NCBI RefSeq assembly: GCF_964213995.1
Contig: NC_135830.1
Location: 744,001-808,000, forward strand
DNA: 64,000 nucleotides
Origin: Mustelus asterias
Taxonomy: Eukaryota
Direction of reading: 5' to 3'
Below are positions 26,897-63,785 of this stretch, piece after piece. The translations under genes and the position numbers were made by a program. The stretch's first letter is position 1; each line of letters starts with the position of its first letter. The notes beneath the pieces were generated by a model that saw only the letters and a program-made list of their open reading frames with translations, was not told the DNA's origin and did no database searches.

Positions 26897-29800
26897 GAGC
26901 AAGCTGAGAGGGAGTGATTGGAGGCAGCAGTGCTGGTGAGAGATTAATTGAATTGTTTATTTATTTCATTAGTCAGCTAGTGTGTGTTTTATTTTGGCCT
27001 TTACTTTTGCAGCAGTATTTTAAGTTTAAAGTGAAAACTGGAAGTGGGCTGCTAAGGAGTCTGGGAAGGGTTTTTTAAGCGCGTGAAGTATAAAAGGGAG
27101 GCTGCAGTATACAGCGGGCAGCGTCGGGAGCGGGCAGTGGAGTGCGTGGGAAGCAGAGTGTGAGCTATAAGGCTTTGGCTCACAGGGCTTAGGCAGAAAG
27201 GGCGAGCAGGGGTGAGTTTAATTCATTTTTGCTGTTTCTACCTGGTACTGGCAAGGTAGCTAGAGGGGATGGGTGTGCAGGGCTATGTTCCTCTTGTACT
27301 ATGTTTGAGGTGAGGGACGACGACAGTGTCCCTGCTGATTACATCTGTGGGAAGTGCACCCATCTGCCGCTCCTCCAAAACCGTGTTAGGGAACTAGAGC
27401 TGGAGTTGGATGAACTTAGGATCATTAGGGACGCAGAGGTGGCCATAGACAGAAGCTTTAGGAATACAGTTACTCCGAGGAATGAAAACAGATGGGTGAC
27501 GGTGAGAGGGGCTGGGAGGAAGCAGTCCGTGCAGGGATCCCCGGTGGTCGTTCACCTTAGCAACAAGTATTCCGCTTTGGATACGGTTGAGGGGGATAAC
27601 ATACCAGTGGTGAGCCGCAGTGAGAGGATCTCCAGCACTGTGTCGTCTCTGTGGCTCGGGAGGGTAAGGGGCAGAGCTGGAGGGCAAGAGTTATTGGGGA
27701 CTCGTTAGTTAGAGGGATAGACAGGAGGTTCTGTGGCAGCAAAAGAGACTCACGGATGGTATGTTGCCTACCGGATGCCAAGGTCCGTGACGTCTCAGAC
27801 CGTGTTTTCCGGACTCTGAAGTGGGAGGGGAAACAGTCACAAGTCGTGGTACACATTGGTACCAATGACATAGATAAGAGAAGGGACGGGGATTTAAATC
27901 AGGAATTCCTGGAGCTGGGCTGGAAGCTGAGAGCCAAGACAAAACATGTGGTCATCTCTGGTACGTTGCTGGTGCCACGTGATAGCGAGTTGAGGAACAG
28001 GGAAAGAGTGCAGTCAAACATGTGGTTGCAGGGATGATGTAGGAGGGAGGGCTTCAGATACGTGGATAATTGGAACACATTCTGGGGGAGGTGGGACCAG
28101 TACAAACAGGACGGGGTGCACCTGAACCAGAGGGGCACCAATATCCTAGGAGGGAAATTTGTTACGTCTCTTCAGGGGGGTTTAAACTAATTTGTCAGGG
28201 GAGTGGGAAAAGGAGTTGTAGTCCAGAAGTCAGTGAGGGTGGTGAGGTATTGGGGAAGGTATCAGGGTCAAGGGTGGGTACCGGTAGACAGGAAGGTGGG
28301 TTGAAGTGTGTCTACTTCAATGCAAGGAGCATCCGGAACAAGGTAGATGAACTTGGGGCGTGGATTGGTACTTAGGACTACGATGTGGTGGCCATTACGG
28401 AGACGTGGGTAGAACAAGGACAGGAATGGTTGTTGGACATTCCGGGGTATAAATGTTTCACTAAGTGTAGGGAAGCTGGTAAAAGAGGTGGAGGAGTGGC
28501 ATTGTTAATCAAGGATAGTTTAACGGCTGCGGAAAGGCACTTCGAGGGGGATCTGCACACTGAGGTAATATGGGCTGAGGTTAGAAATAGGAAAGGAGCG
28601 GTCACGTTGTTAGGAGTTTACTATAGGCCCCCAAATAGTAATAGAGATGTGGAGGAAGAAATTGCTAAGCAGATTATGGATATGTGTGGGGGTCACAGGG
28701 TAGTTGTCATGGGGGACTTTAACTTTCCAAATATTGATTGGAACCTTTGTAGCTCAAATAGTTCGGATGGGGCAGTTTTTGTGCAGTGTGTGCAGGAGGG
28801 TTTCCTGACACAATATGTGGATAGGCCGACAAGAGGTGAGGCCACATTGGATTTGGTACTGGGAAATGAACCGGGCCAACTGTTAGATTTGGTTGTGGGA
28901 GAGCACTTTGGAGATAGTGACCACAATTCGGTGTCTTTTGTTATTGCAATGGAGAGGGATAGGGCCGTACGTCAGGGCAAGGTTTACAATTGGGGGAGAG
29001 GTAATTATGATGCGATTAGGCAAGAATTAGGGGGCATAAATTGGGAACAGAAACTGTCAGAGAAAGGAACTGATGAAAAGTGGAACTTTTTCAAGGAACA
29101 AAGACTGGATGTCCTTGATAGGTATGTCCCTGTCAGGCAGGGAGGAAATGGCCGAGTGAGGGAACCATGGTTCACGAAAGAGGTGGAATGTCTTGTGAAA
29201 AGGAAGAGGGAAGCTTATGTAGGGATGAGGAAACAAGGTTCAGATGGCTCGATTGAGGGTTACAAGTTAGCAAGGAATGAGCTGCAAAAGGGGCTTAGGA
29301 GAGCTATGAGGGGACATGAGAAGTGCTTGGCAGGTCGGATCAAGGAAAACCCCAAGGCTTTTTACTCTTATGTGAGGAATAAAAGAATGACCAGGGTGAG
29401 GTTAGGGCCGGTCAAGGGCAGTAGTGGGAACTTGTGTATGGAGTCAGTAGAGATAGGCGAGGTGATGAATGAATACTTTTCTTAAGTGTTCACCAAGGAG
29501 AGGGGCCATGTTTTTGAGGAACAGAAGGTGTTACAGGCTAATAGGCTGGAGGAAATAGATGTTCGGAGGGAGGATGTCCTGGCAGTTTTGAATAAACTGA
29601 AGGTCGATAAGTCCCCTGGGCCTGATGAAATGTATCCTAGGATTCTTTGGGAGACAAGGGATGAGATTGCAGAGTCTTTGGCTTTGATCTTTGGGTCCTC
29701 GCTGTCCACGGGGATGGTGCCAGAGGACTGGAGAATGGCGAATGTTGTTCCTCTGTTTAAGAATGGGAATAGAAATTACCCTGGTAATTATAGACCGGTT

Positions 29801-31990
29801 AGTCTTACTTTGGTGGTTGGTAAATTGATGGAAAAGTCCCTTAGAGATGGGATTTACGACCATTTAGAAAGATGCGGATTAATCTGGGGGAGTCAGCACG
29901 GATTCGTGAAGGGCAAGTCGTGCCTCACAAATTTGATAGAATTTTTTGAGGAGGTAACTAAATGTGTTGATGAAGGTAGGGCAGTTGATGTCATATACAT
30001 GGATTTTAGGAAGGCATTTGATAAGGTCCCCCATGGTCGGCTTATGATGAAAGTGAGGAGGTGTGGGATAGAGGGAAAGTTGGCCGATTGGATAGGTAAC
30101 TGGCTGTCTGATCGAAGACAGAGGGGGTGGTGGATGGAAAATTTTCGGATTGGAGGCAGGTTGCTAGCGGAGTGCCGCAGGGATCAGTGCTTGGTCCTCT
30201 GCTCTTTGTGATTTTTATTAATGACTTAGAGGAGGGGGCTGAAGGGTGGATCAGTAAATTTGCTGATGACACCAAGATTGGTGGAGTAGTGGATGAGGTG
30301 GAGGGCTGTTGTAGGCTGCAAAGAGACATAGATATGATGCAAAGCTGGGCTGAACAATGGCAAATGGCGTTTAACCCTGATGAATGTGAGGTGATTCATT
30401 TTGGTAGGACTAATTTAAATGTGGATTACAGGGTCAAAGGTAGGGTTCTGAAGACTGTGGAGGAACAGAGAGATCTTGGGGTCCATATCCACAGATCTCT
30501 AAAGGTTGCCACTCAAGTGGATAGAGCTGTGAAGAAGGCCTATAGTGTGTTAGCTTTTATTAACAGGGGGTTGGAGTTTAAGAGCCGTGGGGTTATGCTG
30601 CAACTGTACAGGACCTTGGTGAGACCGCATTTGGAATATTGTGTGCAGTTCTGGTCACCTCACTATAAGAAGGATGTGGAAGCGCTGGAAAGAGTGCAAA
30701 GGAGATTTACCAGGATGCTGCCTGGTTTGGAGGGTAGGTCTTATGAGGAAAGGTTGAGGGAGCTAGGGCTGTTCTCTCTGGAACGGAGGAGGCTGAGGGG
30801 AGACTTAATAGAGGTTTATAAAATGATGAAGGTTATAGATAGAGTGAACGTTCAAAGACTATTTCCTCGGGTGGATGGAGCTATTACAAGGGGGCATAGC
30901 TATAGGGTTCGTGGTGGGAGATATAGAACATAGAACATAGAACATAGAACATTACAGCACAGAACAGGCCCTTCGGCCCACGATGTTGTGCCGACCTTCA
31001 TCTGAAACCAAGATCAAGCTATCCCACTCCCTACCATCCTGGTGTGCTCCATGTGCCTATCCAATAACCGCTTAAATGTTCCTAAAGTGTCTGACTCCAC
31101 TATCACTGCAGGCAGTCCATTCCACACCCCAACCACTCTCTGCGTGAAGAACCTACCTCTGATATCCTTCCTATATCTCCCACCATGAACCCTATAGTTA
31201 TGCCCCCTTGTAATAGCTCCATCCACCCGAGGAAATAGTCTTTGAACGTTCACTCGATCTATCCCCTTCATCATTTTATAAACCTCTATTAAGTCTCCCC
31301 TCAATCTCCTCCGCTCCAGAGAGAATAGCCCCAGCTCCCTCAACCTTTCCTCATAAGACCGACACTCCAAACCAGGCAGCATCCTGGTAAATCTCCTCTG
31401 CACTCTTTCCAGCGCTTCCACATCCTTCTTATAGTGAGGTGACCAGAACTGCACGCAATATTCCAAATGCGGTCTCACCAAGGTCCTGTACAGTTGCAGC
31501 ATAACCCCACGGCTCTTAAACTCCAACCCCCTGTTAATAAAAGCTAACACACTATATGCCTTCTTCACAGCTCTATCCACTTGAGTGGCAACCTTTAGAG
31601 ATCTGTGGATATGGACCCCAAGATCTCTCTGTTCCTCCACAGTCTTCAGAACCCTACCTTTGACCCTGTAATCCACATTTAAATTAGTCCTACCAAAATG
31701 AATCACCTCACATTTATCAGGGTTAAACTCCATTTGCCATTTTTCATATAGGAAGGATATCAGAGGTAGGTTCTTTACGCAGAGAGTGGTTGGGGTGTGG
31801 AATGGACTGCCTGCAGTGATAGTGGAGTCAGACACTTTAGGAACATTTAAGCGCTTATTGGATAGGCACATGGAGCACACCAGGATGATAGGGAGTGGGA
31901 TAGCTTGATCTTGGTTTCAGATAAAGCTCGGCACAACATCGTGGGCCGAAGGGCCTGTTCTGTGCTGTACTGTTCTATGTTCTATGTTCT
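26897..31990 (+). mobile_element. near full-length CR1/HER1-type LINE, inactivated (5'UTR, ORF1, ORF2, tail)
   Basis: ORF1 ~27269-28188 has CxxC..CxxC, a leucine zipper and SGNH esterase motifs (VIGDS, HIGTND, DGVHLN), with frameshifts. ORF2 ~28190-30930 has APE (AITETW, GDFN, SDHN) and RT ([14 protein letters not shown]), with stops at 28373 and 29483 and a frameshift ~30125. (TTCTATG)n tail ends ~31990. Confidence 0.95.
30927..31745 (-). mobile_element. 5'-truncated CR1 copy nested antisense inside the full-length copy
   Basis: Begins with a (CATAGAA)n reverse tail. TSD ATATAG at 30921 and 31746. Sequence nearly identical to the host 3' region. Confidence 0.93.
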
Positions 31991-32812: not shown

Positions 32813-34834
32813 ACTGTACGTATCTGTCAGGCAGGGAGGAAGCAGTCGTGTGAGGCAACCGTGGTTTACTAAGGAGGTTGAATCTCTTGTGAAGAGGAAG
32901 AAGGAGACTTATGTAAATATGAGACGTGTAGGCTCAGTTAGGGCACTTGAGAGTCACAAGTTAGCCAGGAAGGACCTAAAGAAAGAGTTAAGAAGAGCCA
33001 GGAGGGGACATGAGAAGTCTTCGGCAGGTCGGATCAAGAAAAACCCTAAAGCTTTCTATAGGTATGTCAGGAGTAAAAGAATGACTAGGGTAAGATTAGG
33101 GCCAGTCAAGGACAGTAGTGGGAAGTTGTGCGTGGAGTCTGAAGAGATAGGAGAGGCACTAAATGAATATTTTTCTTCGGTATTCACACAGGAGAGGGAC
33201 AGTGTTGTCGAGGGGAATACTGAGATGCAGGCTGTTGGACTGGATGGGATTAAGGTTCATAAGGAGGAGGTGTTAGCAAATCTGGAAAGGGTAAGAATAG
33301 ATTAGTCCCCTGGGCTGGATGAGATTTATCCTCGGATTCTCTGGGAGGCTCGAGAGGAGATTGCAGAGCCTTTGGCTTTGATCTTTGTGTCGTCATTGTC
33401 GACAGGAACAGTGCCAGAAGACTGGAGGACAGCAAATGTTGTCCCCTTGTTCAAGAAGGAGAGTAGGGACAACCCTGATAATTATAGACCGGTGAGCCTT
33501 ACTTCTGTTGTGGGCAAAGTTTTGGAAAGGAATATCAGAGATGGGATTTATAATCACCTGGAAAGGAATAATTTGATTAGGGATAGTCAGCACAGTTTTG
33601 TGAAGGGTAGGTCGTGCCTCACAAACCTTATTGAGTTCTTTGAGAAGGTGACCAAAGAGGTGGATGAGGGTAAAGCGGTTGATGTGGTGTATATGGATTT
33701 CAGCAAAGCGTTTGATCAGGTTCCTCATGGTAAGCTTTTGCAGAAAATACGGACACATGGGATTGAGGGTGATTTAGTGGTTTGGAGCAGGAATTGGCTA
33801 GCTGTAGGAAAACAGAGGGTGGTGCTTGATGGGAAATATTCATTCTGGAGTTCAGTTACTAGTGGTGTACCGCAAGGATCTGTTTTGGGGCCACTGCTGT
33901 TTGTTATTTTTATTAATGACCTGGATGAGGGCGTAGAAGGATGGATGACACTAAAGTCGGTGGAGTTGTAGACAGTGTGGAGGGAAGTGGCAGGTTACAG
34001 AGGGACATAAATAAACTGCAGAGCTGGGCTGAGAGGTGGCAAATGGAGTTTAATGCGGAAAAGTGTGAGGTGATTCACTTTGGAAGGAGTAACAGGAATA
34101 CAGAGTACTGGGCTAATGGTAAGATACTTGGTAGTGTGGATGAACAGAGGGATCTGGGTGTCCATGTGCATAGATCCCTGAAAGCTGGCACCCAGGTTGA
34201 TAGGGCTGTTAAGAAGGCATACCGTGTGTCAGCTTTTATTGGTGGAGGGATTGAGTTTCGGAGCCAGGAGGTCATGCTGCAACTGTACAAAATTCTGGTG
34301 CGGCCGCACTTGGAGTATTGCGTACAGTTCTGGTTGCTGCAATATAGGAAAGATGTGGAAGTGTTGGAAAGGGTGCAGAGGAGATTTTCCAGGATGTTGC
34401 CTGGTATGGTGGGAAAATCGTATGAGGAAAGGCTGAGGGGCTTGAGGTTGTTTTCGTTAGAGAGAAGAAGGTTAAGAGATGACTTAATAGAGGCATACAA
34501 GATGATCAGAGGATTAGATAGGGTTGATAGTGAGAGCCTTTTTCCTCGGATGATGATGGCTAACACGAGGGGACATAGCTTTAAATTGAGGGGTGAGAGA
34601 TATAGGACAGATGTTAGAGGTAGGTTCTTAACTCAGAGAGTAGAAAGGGCGTGGAATGCCCTGCCTGCAGCAATAGTGGACTCGTCAACATTGAAAGCAT
34701 TCAAATGGTTATTGGATAAACACATGGATAATATTGGAATAGTGTAGATTAGAGGGGCTTTAGATTGGTTTCACTGGTCGGCGCAACATCGAGGGCCGAA
34801 GGGCCTGTACTGCGCTGGAATGTTCTATGTTCTA
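32813..34834 (+). mobile_element. 5'-truncated CR1 LINE (ORF2 RT region)
   Basis: [27 protein letters not shown] deletion at ~33945 removes ISKFA. Tail tgttctatgttcta. Confidence 0.93.
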
Positions 34835-49700: not shown

Positions 49701-50708
49701 AGTCAGATTAGTTTGTGCTTTATAAGGACCGTTGTAAAAGTTGGGCAATTAGTAAACAATTGCTGTTGTATCGAAGCAGGGTTCTGAGAAAACTATCGGC
49801 CAATGGTTGATATTTTCGGTTGACATAGGGCTGTGGAGAGACTTGGGCAGCAGGATCACTTCAGAATTATGATAAGAAAGTCGGGGAATGATTTAGCATT
49901 AGGTTTGGGTTGGTGTAGGATTATGCAGAGACGGAAAGTGGATCTACTTTCTGATTATTCTGAACTTCGGAGTGAACCGCGCAACAGGATCCCTGAAGAA
50001 TTTAAGACAATGTTGTAAAGAGGTGGGAAACAGTCGGAAGAGATTTTGCTTTTCAGTCGGTCATGGCGAATGGAAGTATTGTTGATCTTGTTATGGGACT
50101 GAGATCAAGCCAGTGAAATGCTTTCAGGTTCGCCTGTTAAGAGGGTGACTGCGATGCTGTGTGCCTCTTTGTTTATTCAGGTTGGTGGATCGGTCTTGGC
50201 AGTGGAATTATCTGTGATTTCATCGAGGTCAAGAAGAGAAGAAAAATCTCTGGGATTTGTGTCGGATTGACTCTGGACAATGAGGGAAAATGTGAATTGT
50301 AACGCATGCTTGATTGACACGGAATGGGGGAATTTGTAATGTACAAATAGCTTTTCGATCCGAATGATCTATGTAGAGACAGCCCAGTTGTGGGATTGCC
50401 TGTTGCCAGGTACAAGGCTATCAAAAGCCAAAGTTTGCAGGACTGAACTTGACACGCAACTGTTTGGAAAGTGAGCAGGAACATTGTGAATTGTCTGTGA
50501 TAGCTATCAGACTATGAAGAGAGAGTAAATCGTGTGTTAATTTTATTGTTCTTCCCAAATTAGCAAAAGAGAGCTATTGGGCCTGATTTTACCATTTTGA
50601 GTCAAAGTGCCGATTCCGGGCGTCAAATAGATCCGCGCCTGGAATCCTCTTTCCAGCGCGCACATACGCGTTTTGCCGGCTCCGGTCCGATTCCCGGCTC
50701 GGGTCACT

Positions 50709-51064
50709 GGGGCGGCACGGTAGCACAGTGGTTAGCACTGCTGCTTCACAGCTCCAGGATCCCGGGTTCGATTCCCGGCTCGGGTCACTGTCTGTGTGGA
50801 GTTTGCACATTCTCCTCGTGTCTGCGTGGGTTTCCTCCGGGTGCTCCGGTTTCCTCCCACAGTCCAAAGATGTGCGGGTTAGGTTGATTGGCCAGGTTAA
50901 AAATTGCCCCTTAGAGTCCTGGGATGCGTAGGTTAGAGGGATTAGCGGGTAAATTAGCGGGTAAAAAAAAAGGGGATTAGCGGGTAGGGCCTGGGTGGGA
51001 TTGTGTTCGGTGCAGACTCGATGGGCCGAATGGCCTCCTTCTGCACTGTAGGGTTTCTATGATT
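50709..51064 (+). mobile_element. young HE1-type SINE inserted within the DNA transposon
   Basis: Near-identical to the 21266 copy. ATTAGCGGGTA is triplicated internally. Confidence 0.92.
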
Positions 51065-51412
51065 CGCGCTGTGGGCGGGGCTTAGCCCTGGCGGACCGAT
51101 CGGAGCTCTGAACTGCGCATGCGCAGTTCGAAAACAATCTGACCGGGCGCACCCGGGCGCAAAAGAAAAAAAAACAGAAAGCGGAGAGAGCGGCTCTCTG
51201 AAGATTATCCTCTGGTGGGGGGCGGTGGGGGCGGGTGGGAGGGTGGTAGGGACCCAGATCATCCAATGGTCGGTGGGGGGGGGGGGTTCGGCTGCCGGTC
51301 TGCGGCCGATCGGTGGGGAGGGAGGGGGCAGGGGGTTCCGCCTCCACTCTGCGTGCAATCCCTCCTCCCCACCGGAGGAACAAATACCTCCTGCCGGAGT
51401 GGACGTGCAGCA

Positions 51413-51567
51413 ATGCCATCCCACAAAATCTTCAGGATGAAGCGATTCCTCGCTAAGAAGATGAAGTAGAACCGGCCGATTCCATAGTGGATCCACGTGA
51501 AAAACGGCCACAAGACCAATACAACTCCAAGAGGAGATGCTGGAGAAGGACCAAGCTGGGCCTGTAA
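51413..51567 (+). pseudogene. RPL39: processed ribosomal protein L39 pseudogene (left arm)
   Basis: [33 protein letters not shown]-(1-nt deletion)[15 protein letters not shown]. Intronless, two stops. Confidence 0.93.
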
Positions 51568-51679
51568 AGGGATACACCGTCACTGGTACACTACCAGCCA
51601 CAGATTACTCTTCCCTGCAGGGGCAAGAGAGCGAGAGAGATGGCTGTGGCTGGTAGTGTACCAGTGACGGTGTATCCCT

Positions 51680-51834
51680 TTACAGGCCCAGCTTGGTCCT
51701 TCTCCAGTGTCTCCTCTTGGAGTTGTACTGATCTTGTAGCCGGTTTTCATGCGGATCCACTGTGGAATCGGCCGGTTCTGCTTCATCTCCTTGGCGAGGA
51801 ATCGCTTCATCCTGAAGGTTTTGTGGGATGGCAT
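51680..51834 (-). pseudogene. RPL39: processed ribosomal protein L39 pseudogene (right arm)
   Basis: [35 protein letters not shown]-(1-nt deletion)[15 protein letters not shown]. Intronless, same frameshift as the left copy. Confidence 0.95.
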
Positions 51835-53017
51835 TGCCGCACATCCACTCCGGCAGGAGGGATTCATTCCTCCGGTGGGGAGGAGGGATCGCCCGCAGAG
51901 TGGTGGCGGAACCCCCTGCCCCCTCCCTCCCCACCGATCGGCTGCAGACTGGGGGCAGAACCCCCCCTGGCCAGAGGATGATCTGGGTCCCCCCCCCCCC
52001 CCCCCCGCAACCAGAGGATGACCTGGGTCAGAGAGCCGTTGGAAAGCTCTGACCCCGCTCTTCGGATGCTGCAGTGAGCAGTGACGACTTCAGACTTTTA
52101 TTTTGCAGATCGCTTTCAACGCAGATGCAGAATGGGCCAGAAGACGGTAACGTGGGATTTGGCAATAGGGTTGGGCACGCAGTTCATTAAGTCGATTTAA
52201 ATGCATGCAAATGCATTAACTCATTAGGCCGCCCGATTCGGGCGCGGGCCGGACCCGCGCCGAATCGGGTGTCGGTAAAACCGCGATCTGCTCGGAATCG
52301 GGTGCAGATCACGGTATAGGCCCGACGCCCACCTTTACCGCGATTTCGCGCCCGTTTGGTAAAAATCGGGCCCATTGTGTTGAATTATTTTGTGGAATGA
52401 GACAAATCAATAGGGAAGGAATGGGACTGCTGGATAATAACATCACAAGAGGAATGTGGCTGCAATTGCTGGAAACCGTTGCAAAACAATGGGTGGAGAG
52501 TGGAACTGCCTCAGAATATTACAGGGACTGTAAGAGGGAAATAAAGAATATAGTTTATTGCAGCATGTTCGTGCAGACCTGCGAGGGGATAGCGCCAATA
52601 GCGAATATGGTTTATGAAGGGATCTTTCTAATAGGTTAAATGGCTCGTCAAAGGCGGCCGAGGAATCTATGTAAAATTCTTAGAAGGTTGATGTACAATT
52701 GCACATTCAGGGGAAAAGAACATGTTGATGTCAACAAAGACTGTTTACACAGTTAGGCCGACAGCTAAAATGCCGAGTGAGTTCGGCACTTTCTCAAAGC
52801 ACGTAGTGCAAGGCCAAGCCTGGTGGCAACAACAGATTCGGAAGTGGCCCGAAAAAATAGGGGAAACAGATGATTCTTGAAATAACGACACCCTGCCTCA
52901 TACTGTCTGTAAATTTTTGAGCGTGAAACAAAAATAGGCAATGTTGGAATTTAAACAATATGCTGCCCACGTGATTTTGAGCTGCTTATTTATCCCATTA
53001 ATCATCTCATTAATTAT

Positions 53018-56880: not shown

Positions 56881-57827
56881 AATGGATGAGGGTATAGTTG
56901 GGTGGATTAGCAAATTTGCTGATGACACCAAAGTCGGTGGTGTGGTAGACAGTGAGGAAGGGTGTCGTAGTTTGCAGGAAGACTTAGACAGGTTGCAAAG
57001 TTGGGCCGAGAGGTGGCGGATGGAGTTTAATGCGGAGAAGTGTGAGGTAATTCACTTTGGTAGGAATAACAGATGTGTTGAGTATAGGGCTAACGGGAGG
57101 ACTTTGAATAGTGTGGAGGAGCAGAGGGATCTAGGTGTATGTGTGCATAGATCCCTGAAAGTTGGGAATCAAGTAGATAAGGTTGTTAAGAAGGCATATG
57201 GTGTCTTGGCGTTTATTGGTAGGGGGATTGAATTTAGGAGTCGTAGCGTTATGTTGCAACTGTACACAACTCTGGTGCGGCCGCACTTGGAGTACTGTGT
57301 GCAGTTCTGGTCCCCACATTACAGGAAGGAGGCGAAGGCTTTGGAGAGGGTGCAGAGGAGGTTTACCAGGATGTTGCCTGGTATGGAGGGGAGATCCTAT
57401 GAGGAGAGGCTGAGGGATTTGGGATTGTTTTCGCTGGAAAGGCGGCGGCTAAGAGGGGATCTTATTGAAACATATAAGATGATTAGAGGTTTAGATAGGG
57501 TGGATAGTGATAGCCTTTTTCCTCTGATGGAGAAATCCAGCACGAGGGGGCATGGCTTTAAATTGAGGGGGGGTAGTTATAGAACCGATGTCAGGGGTAG
57601 GTTCTTTACCCAGAGGGTGGTGAGGGATTGGAATGCCCTGCCAGCATCAGTAGTAAATGCGCCTAGTTTGGGGGCGTTTAAGAGATCCGTAGATAGGTTC
57701 ATGGACGAAAAGAAATTGGTTTAGGTTGGAGGGTCACAGTTTTTTTTTTTAACTGGTCGGTGCAACATCGTGGGCCGAAGGGCCTGTTCTGCGCTGTAAT
57801 GTTCTATGTTCTATGTTCTATGTTCTA
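56881..57827 (+). mobile_element. young CR1 3' fragment with an uninterrupted 280-aa ORF, nested in an older antisense CR1
   Basis: ORF 56882-57724 with FADD and a (TTCTATG)n tail. Flanked by the older minus-strand copy (56815-56880 and 57828-58420). Confidence 0.92.
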
Positions 57828-62346: not shown

Positions 62347-63785
62347 GAACATGGAACATAGAAAAACGACAGCACAAACAGGCCCTGCGGCCCACAAGTT
62401 GCGCCGGTCGTGTCCCTACCTACCTAGGCCTATATATAGGCTTACCTATAACCCTCATTCCTATTAAGTCCCATGTACTCATCCAGAAGTCTCTTAAAAG
62501 ACCCTATCGAGTTTGCCTCCACCACCATTGACGGCAGCCGATTCCACTCACCCACCACCCTCTGAGTGAAAAACTTACCCCTGACATCTCCTCTGTACCT
62601 ACTCACCTTAAACCTGTGTCCTCTCGTAGCAGCCATTTCAGCCCTGGGAAAAAGCCTCTGAGAATCCACCCGAGCTATACCTCTCAACATCTTGCAGACT
62701 TCTATCAGGTCACCTCTCATCCTTCGTCTCTCCAAGGAGAAAAGACCGAGCTCCCTCAACCTATCCTCATAAGACATGCCACCCAATCCAGGCAACATCC
62801 TTGTAAATCTTCTCTGCACCCTTTCAATAATTTCTGCATCCTTCCTGTAATGAGGCGACCAGAACTGAGCACAGTACTCTAAGTGGGGTCTGACGAGGGT
62901 CTTATAAAGCTGCATCATTATCTCCCGACTCCGAAACTCAATCCCTCGATTGATGAAGGCCAGCACACCATACGCCTTCTTAACCACCTCCTCTACCTGC
63001 GAGGCCGATTTAAGAGTCCTATGGACCCGGACCCCAAGGTCCTTCTGATCCTCTACATTGCTAAGAGTCTTACCCTTGGCATTATACTCCTTCATCCCAT
63101 TTGAACTGCCAAAATGGACCACTACACATTCATCCGGGTTGAAGTCCATCTGCCACTTCTCCGCCCAGTCTTGCATCCTATCTATGTCACGCTGCAGCTT
63201 CTGACATCCCTCCAGACTATCAACAACACCACCAACCTTGGTGTTGTCGGCAAACTTACCCACCCATCCCTCCACTTCCTCATCCAGGACATTTATGAAA
63301 ATGACAAACAGCAAGGGTCCCAGAACAGATCCCTGGGACTCTCCACTGGTGACCGACCTCCATTCAGAGAAAGACCCATCTACAACCACTCTCTGCCTTC
63401 TGCAGGTAAGCCAGTTCTGGATCCACAAGGCAACAGCCCCTTGGATCGCATGCCCTCTCACTTTCTCGAGAAGTATTGCATGGGGGACCTTATCGAACGC
63501 CTTGCTGAAGTCCATGTAAACCACATCTACCGCTTTTCTTTCGTCAACATGTTTAGTCACATTTTCAAAGAAATCCACCAGGCTCATAAGGCACGATTTG
63601 CCATTGACAAAGCCGTGCTGACTACCTTTGAGCATACTAAACTTCTCTAAATGTTCATAAATCCTGTCCCTCAGGACCTTCTCCATCTACTTACCAACCA
63701 CTGAGGTTAGACTCACCAGTCGGTAATTTCCTGGGCTATCCCTATTCCCTTTCTTGAATATAGGAACCACATCCGCAATCCTCCA
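62347..63785 (-). mobile_element. 5'-truncated CR1 LINE (RT), catalytic motif mutated to FADN
   Basis: ORF 62442-63686 (414 aa) plus upstream frame 63687-63785 (NYRLVSLTS). Confidence 0.93.

What the first reader, a model, noticed from the sequence alone, without database searches (positions are those of the whole stretch)
51191..52038. Tail-to-tail RPL39 pseudogenes form a ~400 bp hairpin: candidate mobile endo-siRNA cassette against a ribosomal protein
Seen: inverted arms ~51191-51603 and 51644-52038 around a 40-nt loop that is itself partly palindromic. The two 155-nt CDS copies differ at 13 positions, but the innermost 64 bp are identical, suggesting arm-to-arm conversion. Both share a 1-nt deletion at ATC AG^TAC, so one damaged copy was mirrored. 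From memory, that position is the vertebrate RPL39 exon 2/3 junction. Established: inverted-repeat pseudogenes yield Dicer-dependent endo-siRNAs that regulate parent genes in mouse oocytes, as do Drosophila hpRNAs. Inference: a transposon-borne hairpin RNA able to target RPL39 mRNA in trans.
Basis: partly seen in the sequence, partly recalled or inferred. Interest (0 to 1): 0.85.

Follow-up and report, generated by a model that had tools for sequence, protein, structure and literature searches.

The report
Transposon-borne mirrored RPL39 pseudogene hairpin
A small non-autonomous DNA transposon in a shark-type genome carries two mirror-image dead copies of the ribosomal protein gene RPL39 that could fold into a long RNA hairpin, but nothing yet shows that it is transcribed or silences anything.

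Summary
Arms 51191-51603 and 51644-52038 flank a 40-nt spacer. Each arm holds a 155-nt intronless RPL39 copy; the copies differ at 13 positions and share a 1-nt deletion in codon 36. The innermost 64 bp are identical.

The palindrome lies inside a 1795-bp element (50579-52373). The element has 15-of-17 terminal inverted repeats and an ATT on both flanks.

Two unnamed ENA proteins show that the unit occurs elsewhere:
- P0121 is colinear with left end + backbone + RPL39, keeps the same deletion, and lacks the SINE-containing insertion of this copy.
- P0008 shares the derived residues M9 and Y33.

First readers of this scan noted six more RPL39-in-transposon loci on other pieces of the same genome. 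I could not check them.

"Transposon-borne" is therefore supported. This copy looks like a decaying relic, with a SINE insertion and 10-11 private changes including two stops on the left arm.

Best reading: a Pack-type, Harbinger-like element with mirrored retropseudogene cargo, which is a new member of a known kind.

The parts
50576..50578 (.). ATT flank, left copy of a candidate 3-bp target-site duplication
   Evidence: The same ATT lies at 52374-52376. The chance of a 3-bp match is 1/64.
50579..50594 (+). Left terminal inverted repeat
   Evidence: It pairs with 52357-52373 at 15 of 17 with one gap. The 12-mer GGGCCNGATTTT occurs only at these two places in the window, in inverted orientation.
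50595..50686 (.). Left subterminal backbone
   Evidence: P0121 aa 149-180 align to 50686..50592.
50687..51069 (.). SINE-containing secondary insertion, not part of the ancestral element
   Evidence: P0121 runs colinearly from about 51070 straight to 50686 and skips this stretch.
51070..51190 (.). Backbone between the insertion and the left arm. It contains a perfect 20-nt palindrome (51110-51129) with the NRF1 consensus GCGCATGCGC at 51115-51124.
   Evidence: P0121 aligns here. The palindrome is seen. The motif occurs once in 64 kb against 0.01 expected. The consensus is given in PMC10810270 (passages).
51191..51603 (+). Left arm, made of a G-rich backbone with ~40-nt units (51191-51310), a ~75-nt self-complementary segment (about 51311-51385), the RPL39 5'UTR (about 51386-51412), the CDS (51413-51567) and 36 nt of 3'UTR (51568-51603)
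   Evidence: The CDS has two stops (codons 19 and 25) and 10-11 private changes.
51604..51643 (.). 40-nt spacer (loop), partly self-complementary
51644..52038 (-). Right arm, mirror of the left. The RPL39 CDS lies at 51834-51680 on the minus strand.
   Evidence: Apart from the frameshift it differs from chondrichthyan RPL39 at only 3 codons (I9M, K16E, N33Y). Pfam PF00832 E 2e-12.
52039..52356 (.). Right backbone, not similar to the left backbone
   Evidence: Self-BLAST of 52030-52400 finds only itself.
52357..52373 (-). Right terminal inverted repeat, followed by ATT at 52374-52376

Best explanation
This is one copy of a non-autonomous terminal-inverted-repeat DNA transposon (50579-52373) of Pack type, probably mobilised by PIF/Harbinger enzymes. 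Its internal cargo is a processed, frameshifted RPL39 pseudogene.

Inferred order of events:
1. A spliced RPL39 mRNA copy carrying a 1-nt loss at the exon 2/3 junction became joined to the element's G-rich backbone.
2. A DNA-level fold-back (template-switch) event in the RPL39 3'UTR mirrored about 400 bp, backbone plus cDNA together, and left a 40-nt spacer.
3. The element spread.
4. This copy then took a SINE-containing insertion and decayed, mostly on its left arm.

Shown here: the palindrome, the shared deletion, the TIRs with matching flanks, the existence of the same backbone+RPL39 unit elsewhere, and the secondary nature of the SINE-containing insertion.

Inferred: the order of events, the superfamily, and that the hairpin potential is a by-product rather than a selected function. 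If read through or driven from the NRF1-type site in the backbone, the RNA would fold into an imperfect ~400-bp duplex with a 64-bp perfect tip. I expect such RNA to be at most a minor source of small RNAs.
For: - Palindrome and fold.
- Shared deletion and shared derived residues (M9, residue 33) in both arms.
- The arms include about 195 nt of non-RPL39 backbone, so the mirroring happened at the DNA level after the cDNA had joined the backbone.
- TIRs match at 15 of 17 with ATT on both flanks; the 12-mer occurs only at the two ends.
- P0121 (ENA, 737-bp contig) is colinear with left end + backbone + antisense RPL39. It keeps the reading frame across the deletion site and skips 50687-51069.
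- P0008 (ENA, 645-bp contig) shares M9 and Y33.
- Six further first-reader notes on the same genome describe RPL39 inside Harbinger-type or foldback elements. These are unchecked leads only.
- LINE reverse-transcriptase ORFs in the window show that a retrocopying machinery exists in this genome.
- Pack-TIRs, including multicopy ones explained by template switching plus transposition, are described in animals (PMC8277862; abstract and passages).
Against: - Copy number in this genome was not measured.
- Only 2 external proteins support a family, both unnamed and of unknown species. A third ORF search found nothing. The profile-free search of 1.84 billion representatives with P0121 found 8 other proteins, all matching only its antisense-RPL39 part (aa 5-61), and none covering the backbone.
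- The flanking triplet is ATT, not the TAA/TTA usual for PIF/Harbinger (PMC2836001 passages). No transposase lies in the window: 0 of 10 tested ORFs of 180 aa or more.
- The TIR 12-mer count in the window (2) is not above chance on its own, with 1.32 expected.
- Neither external protein shows a second arm, so the mirror duplication might be private to this copy.
- There is no poly(A) tail and no LINE-type duplication around the cDNA.
Confidence: 0.65

Rival explanations
1. hpRNA / endo-siRNA cassette. The element is transcribed through both arms. Dicer cuts the duplex into siRNAs, and antisense siRNAs guide cleavage of RPL39 mRNA in trans, so the transposon family tunes or attacks a ribosomal protein gene.
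For: - A very stable long hairpin with a 64-bp perfect tip.
- The right arm is still close to chondrichthyan RPL39, with 47 of 51 codons unchanged.
- A perfect NRF1 consensus, the only one in 64 kb, lies 67 nt outside the left arm, and its core is kept in the P0121 copy.
- Precedents are Drosophila hpRNAs (listing and abstracts of PMC10317233 and PMC10292708) and mouse inverted-repeat endo-siRNAs (PMC11239679 passages).
Against: - There is no expression evidence of any kind.
- The left arm has decayed and a SINE-containing insertion interrupts the element, which is not the pattern of a conserved functional hairpin.
- Nucleotide identity to the parent mRNA could not be measured.
- In the one vertebrate studied in depth, natural endo-siRNA output outside oocytes is described as negligible and depends on a special Dicer isoform.
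- Strong silencing of an essential ribosomal protein by a multicopy element should be selected against (inference).
Confidence: 0.1
2. The mirror duplication is private to this locus. The family carries a single RPL39 copy, and this copy alone suffered a local fold-back or recombination, possibly between two family members. The hairpin is then not itself mobile.
For: - P0121 and P0008 each show only one arm.
- Titles of three of the six other notes describe a single packaged RPL39 copy (unchecked).
- The strong asymmetry of the arms fits a chimeric origin from an older and a younger family copy: 10-11 against 1 derived change, binomial p 0.006-0.04.
Against: - Three other notes describe paired or palindromic RPL39 elements on other pieces of the genome (unchecked).
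- Both arms share a ~75-nt segment that P0121 lacks. The two arms are therefore closer to each other in structure than either is to P0121.
Confidence: 0.2
3. Trigger for silencing of the transposon family itself, analogous to maize Mu killer (recalled, not looked up). Hairpin RNA from rearranged copies feeds siRNA or piRNA pathways that repress related elements. RPL39 is an innocent passenger.
For: The arms include about 195 nt of element backbone besides RPL39, so any small RNAs would also match the element family.
Against: There are no small-RNA data, and nothing here distinguishes this from neutral decay.
Confidence: 0.05
4. Assembly artefact: a fold-back chimeric long read produced a false palindrome.
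For: Palindromes with short spacers are a known artefact class of long-read libraries (general knowledge). No independent reads could be laid.
Against: The arms differ by 26 mismatches in the 324-nt core and by several indels further out, whereas a fold-back of one molecule would give identical arms. The arms also differ in which derived states they carry relative to external copies.
Confidence: 0.02

Closest known systems
Pack-TIR / Pack-MULE type transduplicating DNA transposons (animals: PMC8277862, abstract and passages read)
   Same: It is a non-autonomous element with TIRs and a short flank duplication, carrying a host-gene fragment between its ends. A multicopy origin is attributed to template switching followed by transposition.
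   Different: The cargo here is a spliced cDNA (retropseudogene) rather than genomic DNA, and it is present as a mirror pair. The main text of that paper mentions neither Harbinger nor shark (0 occurrences each). Its supplementary lists of species and superfamilies were not available to me.
Turmoil-1 of C. elegans (PMC2572040, abstract read)
   Same: It is an animal transposon with protein-coding fragments of host genes incorporated into inverted repeat sequences.
   Different: In Turmoil-1 the captured fragments lie in the terminal inverted repeats themselves. Here the mirrored cargo is internal and the short TIRs are separate.
Inverted-repeat pseudogene endo-siRNA loci of mouse oocytes and Drosophila hpRNA loci (PMC11239679 passages; PMC10317233 and PMC10292708 listing and abstracts only)
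   Same: A long inverted duplication derived from a protein-coding gene is predicted to fold into a dsRNA of several hundred bp.
   Different: Those loci are defined by Dicer-dependent 21-23-nt RNAs and target repression. Neither could be tested here. Those loci are not described as cargo of a DNA transposon family.
Ordinary processed ribosomal-protein pseudogenes
   Same: It is an intronless, disabled copy of a highly expressed ribosomal protein mRNA.
   Different: It has no poly(A) tail or LINE-type flank duplication. It is truncated 36 nt into the 3'UTR, mirrored, and embedded in a TIR element.

Membership tests
Processed RPL39 (eL39) pseudogene | Sequence similarity to eL39 | tested here: met
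   Pfam PF00832 at E 2e-12, 47 bits against a cut-off of 21.6. 171 eL39 proteins were hit. The right arm keeps 47 of 51 codons and the left arm 40 of 51, compared with chondrichthyan eL39.
Processed RPL39 (eL39) pseudogene | No introns at the positions of the parent gene's introns | tested here: met
   The CDS is contiguous over 155 nt. Junction positions are inferred indirectly. Turtle models P0001-P0005 go out of frame after ...NKI, and Rhincodon isoform P0018 diverges just before residue 2. The gene structure in this species was not seen.
Processed RPL39 (eL39) pseudogene | Poly(A) tail and LINE-type target-site duplication | tested here: not met
   The copy ends 36 nt after the stop codon at the spacer, with no A-run.
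Pack-type TIR transposon | Terminal inverted repeats plus a flank duplication | tested here: met
   The TIRs match at 15 of 17 with one gap, with ATT on both flanks. The 12-mer occurs only at the two ends.
Pack-type TIR transposon | Internal sequence derived from a host gene | tested here: met
   RPL39 5'UTR, CDS and part of the 3'UTR lie inside.
Pack-type TIR transposon | More than one copy at different sites (mobility) | tested here: inconclusive
   P0121 shows the same unit without the SINE-containing insertion, and P0008 is a related copy. Their species and loci are unknown. Six unchecked notes exist on the same genome. No genome-wide count was possible.
PIF/Harbinger superfamily (non-autonomous member) | 3-bp target-site duplication, usually TAA/TTA (PMC2836001 passages) | tested here: inconclusive
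   A 3-bp repeat is present, but it reads ATT.
PIF/Harbinger superfamily (non-autonomous member) | Ends shared with an autonomous element that encodes a DDE transposase and a Myb-like ORF1 | not testable with these tools
   No such ORF lies in the window: 0 of 10 ORFs of 180 aa or more. Notes s1-892595 and s1-890524 mention Harbinger Myb/SANT genes elsewhere in the genome (unchecked).
hpRNA / endo-siRNA locus | Long inverted repeat that folds as RNA | tested here: met
   -791.6 kcal/mol, z = -62.
hpRNA / endo-siRNA locus | Transcription across both arms | not testable with these tools
No listed holder is on record as RNA.
hpRNA / endo-siRNA locus | Dicer-type 21-23-nt small RNAs and repression of the parent gene | not testable with these tools
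   No small-RNA data were reachable.
Foldback (FB-like) elements | Long inverted arms that form the element's termini | tested here: not met
   The arms end 612 bp and 335 bp inside the TIRs. The outer backbones are not inverted copies of each other.
Known miRNA or other Rfam families | Score at or above the family's gathering threshold | tested here: not met
   17 matches at E up to 1, all far below gathering. The best is MIR1883 at 40 bits against 128.

The most novel reading that the evidence does not exclude
A Harbinger-mobilised element family spreads a ready-made long hairpin against an essential ribosomal protein gene through a shark genome. The hairpin would be driven by the NRF1-type palindrome kept in the backbone. 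In the germline these copies would yield siRNAs or piRNAs that set RPL39 dosage, or that the host uses to silence the family. That would be a vertebrate, transposon-borne counterpart of Drosophila hpRNA loci.
Probability: 0.1. Interest if true: 0.8.

Novelty: new member of a known kind. Interest (0 to 1): 0.4.

Why it matters
Gene capture by cut-and-paste transposons is well known in plants and has been catalogued in animals, where multicopy cases appear to be few. A vertebrate family whose cargo is a spliced ribosomal-protein cDNA, present as a mirror pair, would add a clear case of retrocopy and DNA-transposon cooperation. It would also be a natural experiment on what a vertebrate genome does with many dispersed long hairpins that match an essential gene. 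If small RNAs were found, endogenous RNAi in cartilaginous fish would become directly testable. As it stands, this single decayed copy is a tidy structural finding, not a demonstrated regulator.

Tried and rejected
- **Assembly fold-back artefact:** rejected because the arms differ at 26 of 324 core positions plus indels.
- **LINE twin-priming inversion:** rejected as the origin of the mirror. Both arms contain the same RPL39 segment and also about 195 nt of non-RPL39 backbone, so the duplication was made on DNA after the cDNA had joined the backbone.
- **Foldback-type element:** rejected because the arms do not reach the termini.
- **Known RNA family:** nothing reached a gathering threshold.
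- **A single mutational process behind the left arm's private changes:** they are a mix of C>T, G>A, A>G, T>C and C>A, only one at a CpG. No single signature fits.
- **5'UTR homology to shark RPL39 models:** only the six residues just upstream of the ATG match Scyliorhinus P0012. The true 5' end of the cDNA stays uncertain between about 51361 and 51386.

Searches that led nowhere:
- A third ORF search found no candidate.
- The search of all representatives with P0121 found 8 other proteins, all matching only its antisense-RPL39 part, and no backbone hit.
- Two exact-pattern scans of metagenome contigs and one of viral contigs gave 0 hits each.
- The findings look-up by sequence was blank.
- Paper searches for RPL39 + Harbinger + transposon (1 paper, a general retrocopy review seen in the listing only) and for ribosomal protein + captured + DNA transposon + shark (3 unrelated papers) found no description of this element. 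On the strength of those two searches alone, I say I found it nowhere in print.

Two unnamed ORFs of mammalian type (P0038, P0067) were displayed and end at the same codon as the deletion. Their origin is unknown and could be human. I did not save, compare or search them further and do not rest the junction claim on them.
Full report
**What is in the sequence**

The stretch 51191-52038 is a large imperfect palindrome.
- The repeat finder reports a core of 324 nt (51280-51603 against 51644-51967) at 92% complementarity, with 40 nt between the arms.
- A self-BLAST extends the inverted match to 51191-52038 (83.6% over 878 columns) and shows no further copy in the 64-kb window.
- Folded as RNA, the 871-nt stretch gives -791.6 kcal/mol against -373.2 +/- 6.7 for 20 shuffles.

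Each arm contains a contiguous RPL39 coding sequence, at 51413-51567 on the plus strand and 51834-51680 on the minus strand.
- Both are 155 nt instead of 156 and differ at 13 positions, 12 of them transitions.
- Both lose the frame in codon 36.
- The first 35 codons of the right arm match Pfam Ribosomal_L39 at E 2e-12.
- The innermost 64 bp of the stem are identical. This is unlikely for that specific position (P = 0.0025) and less striking for any such run (P = 0.07).

**What kind of RPL39 copy it is**

The closest proteins with the same N-terminus and residue 17 (MPSHK......AKKMKQ) come from cartilaginous fishes: Scyliorhinus, Rhincodon, Rhinoraja, Narcine and Pristiophorus. Mammals, turtles and teleosts read MSSHK...AKKQKQ. 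One listed run holding part of the stretch is labelled shark metagenome. I take the genome to be that of a shark or a relative, by inference.

The copy is intronless. The position of the shared deletion coincides with the inferred exon 2/3 junction. Five named sea-turtle gene models (P0001-P0005) read correctly to ...NKI and then go out of frame into the same alternative frame as the window copies. I did not see the gene structure of this species.

A random 1-nt deletion would fall on that AGG codon with a chance of about 2 in 155. A mis-spliced or mis-copied template is possible but unproven. Only about 18-27 nt upstream of the ATG resemble the Scyliorhinus upstream region. The copy stops 36 nt after the stop codon, without poly(A).

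**The palindrome sits in a transposon**

I checked them.
- The ends align at 15 of 17 with one gap.
- Both are flanked by ATT.
- The 12-mer GGGCCNGATTTT occurs only at these two places in the window, in inverted orientation. Two matches are not above chance as a bare count, since 1.32 are expected.

**Evidence from outside the window**

A search with the antisense ORF of the right arm returned a single protein among 6 candidates: P0121, from an unnamed ENA contig of 737 bp. Laid on the window, P0121 behaves as follows.
- It is colinear with the antisense of the left arm and the backbone (51577 down to about 51070).
- It then continues directly at 50686-50592, close to the left terminus.
- It keeps its reading frame across the deletion site, so it carries the same 1-nt loss.
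- It skips 50687-51069, the SINE-containing block, which is therefore a later insertion in the window copy.
- It also lacks about 75 nt (roughly 51311-51385) that both window arms have.

A second unnamed protein, P0008 (645-bp contig), shares the derived M9 and Y33 with the window copies and diverges after codon 34.

Six further first-reader notes on other pieces of this genome describe RPL39 inside Harbinger-type, foldback or palindromic elements. They are unchecked and I use them only as leads. By their titles, three describe a pair or palindrome and three a single copy.

**Order of events (inference)**

The arms contain about 195 nt of non-RPL39 backbone as well as the cDNA, and both carry the same deletion. 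The mirror was therefore made on DNA after a damaged cDNA had joined the backbone. That fits a fold-back template switch of the kind proposed for animal Pack-TIRs (PMC8277862, abstract and passages). It does not fit LINE twin priming.

**State of this copy**

Polarised on chondrichthyan RPL39, 10 of the 13 CDS differences are derived on the left arm, including stops at codons 19 and 25. One is derived on the right arm, and 2 cannot be polarised that way. P0008 and P0121 side with the right arm at 7 of 8 informative residues each. The two sets of residues are not independent, because they read the same nucleotides on opposite strands. The imbalance is significant (11:1 p = 0.006; 10:2 p = 0.04) and I cannot explain it. 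Ectopic conversion of the right arm from a younger family copy, or a chimeric origin, are candidates.

**Function**

I could not test transcription. The run search listed 20 rows from 10 studies, none holding half of the words and none on record as RNA. Rfam gives only sub-threshold hairpin look-alikes.

One feature speaks for possible transcription. A perfect 20-nt palindrome at 51110-51129 contains the NRF1 consensus GCGCATGCGC. It is the only occurrence in 64 kb, with 0.01 expected. The consensus is documented in PMC10810270 (passages), and its core is retained in the P0121 copy.

Several points speak against a dedicated anti-RPL39 role.
- This copy has decayed.
- There are no data on expression.
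- In mouse, efficient endogenous RNAi from long hairpins is described as depending on an oocyte-specific truncated Dicer, with negligible natural endo-siRNAs elsewhere (PMC11239679 passages).

I put the by-product reading at about 0.65 and the RPL39-silencing reading at about 0.1.

**Comparison and novelty**

The element works like a Pack-type TIR transposon and passes the tests I could run: TIRs, flank repeat and host-derived cargo. Mobility is only partly shown. Superfamily membership (PIF/Harbinger) is unproven, because the flank is ATT rather than TAA/TTA (PMC2836001 passages) and no autonomous partner was seen. The element is not a foldback element in the strict sense.

Two paper searches found no description of it. 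The main text of the animal Pack-TIR survey mentions neither sharks nor Harbinger, and its supplements were not open to me. I rate the finding as a new member of a known kind, of moderate interest. It would rise sharply only if small RNAs or a genome-wide mirrored family were shown.

**Limits**

Noticed in passing
window 51110-51129: A perfect 20-nt palindrome contains the NRF1 consensus GCGCATGCGC. It is the only occurrence in the 64-kb window (0.01 expected) and lies in the element backbone 62 nt outside the left arm. Its core is kept in the external copy P0121. It may be a promoter element of the transposon.
   Followed up: partly
window 50687-51069: A SINE-containing block of about 383 bp was inserted into the element and is absent from the external copy P0121. 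A 26-nt piece just before the full SINE repeats a later part of the SINE (direct repeat D2).
   Followed up: partly
window about 51311-51385 and mirror about 51862-51936: A ~75-nt self-complementary, G/C-rich segment is present in both arms but absent from P0121. It is either a small hairpin insertion that predates the mirroring or a deletion in the other copy. Sub-threshold miRNA-like Rfam hits fall on it.
   Followed up: no
window 51191-51279 and 51961-52029: The outer parts of both arms consist of ~40-nt units (a CCAGAGGATGATCTGGGTC-like motif followed by G or C runs) repeated twice per arm. The homopolymer runs have different lengths in the two arms.
   Followed up: no
window 28385-30933, 33372-33971, 56882-57724, 62442-63686: ORFs with endonuclease (Exo_endo_phos) and reverse-transcriptase (RVT_1) domains mark several LINE fragments, so the neighbourhood is rich in transposons.
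   Followed up: partly
proteins P0001-P0005 (sea turtle gene models): Annotated turtle 'unnamed protein products' read RPL39 correctly through exon 2 and then continue in the wrong frame of exon 3. They look like mis-modelled splice junctions or frameshifted copies in those assemblies.
   Followed up: no
window 52074-52165: The right backbone contains a short ATG-led frame (MQNGPEDG...) that ends at a GT that could be a splice donor. It may be a remnant of the first exon of the autonomous element's gene. This is speculative.
   Followed up: no
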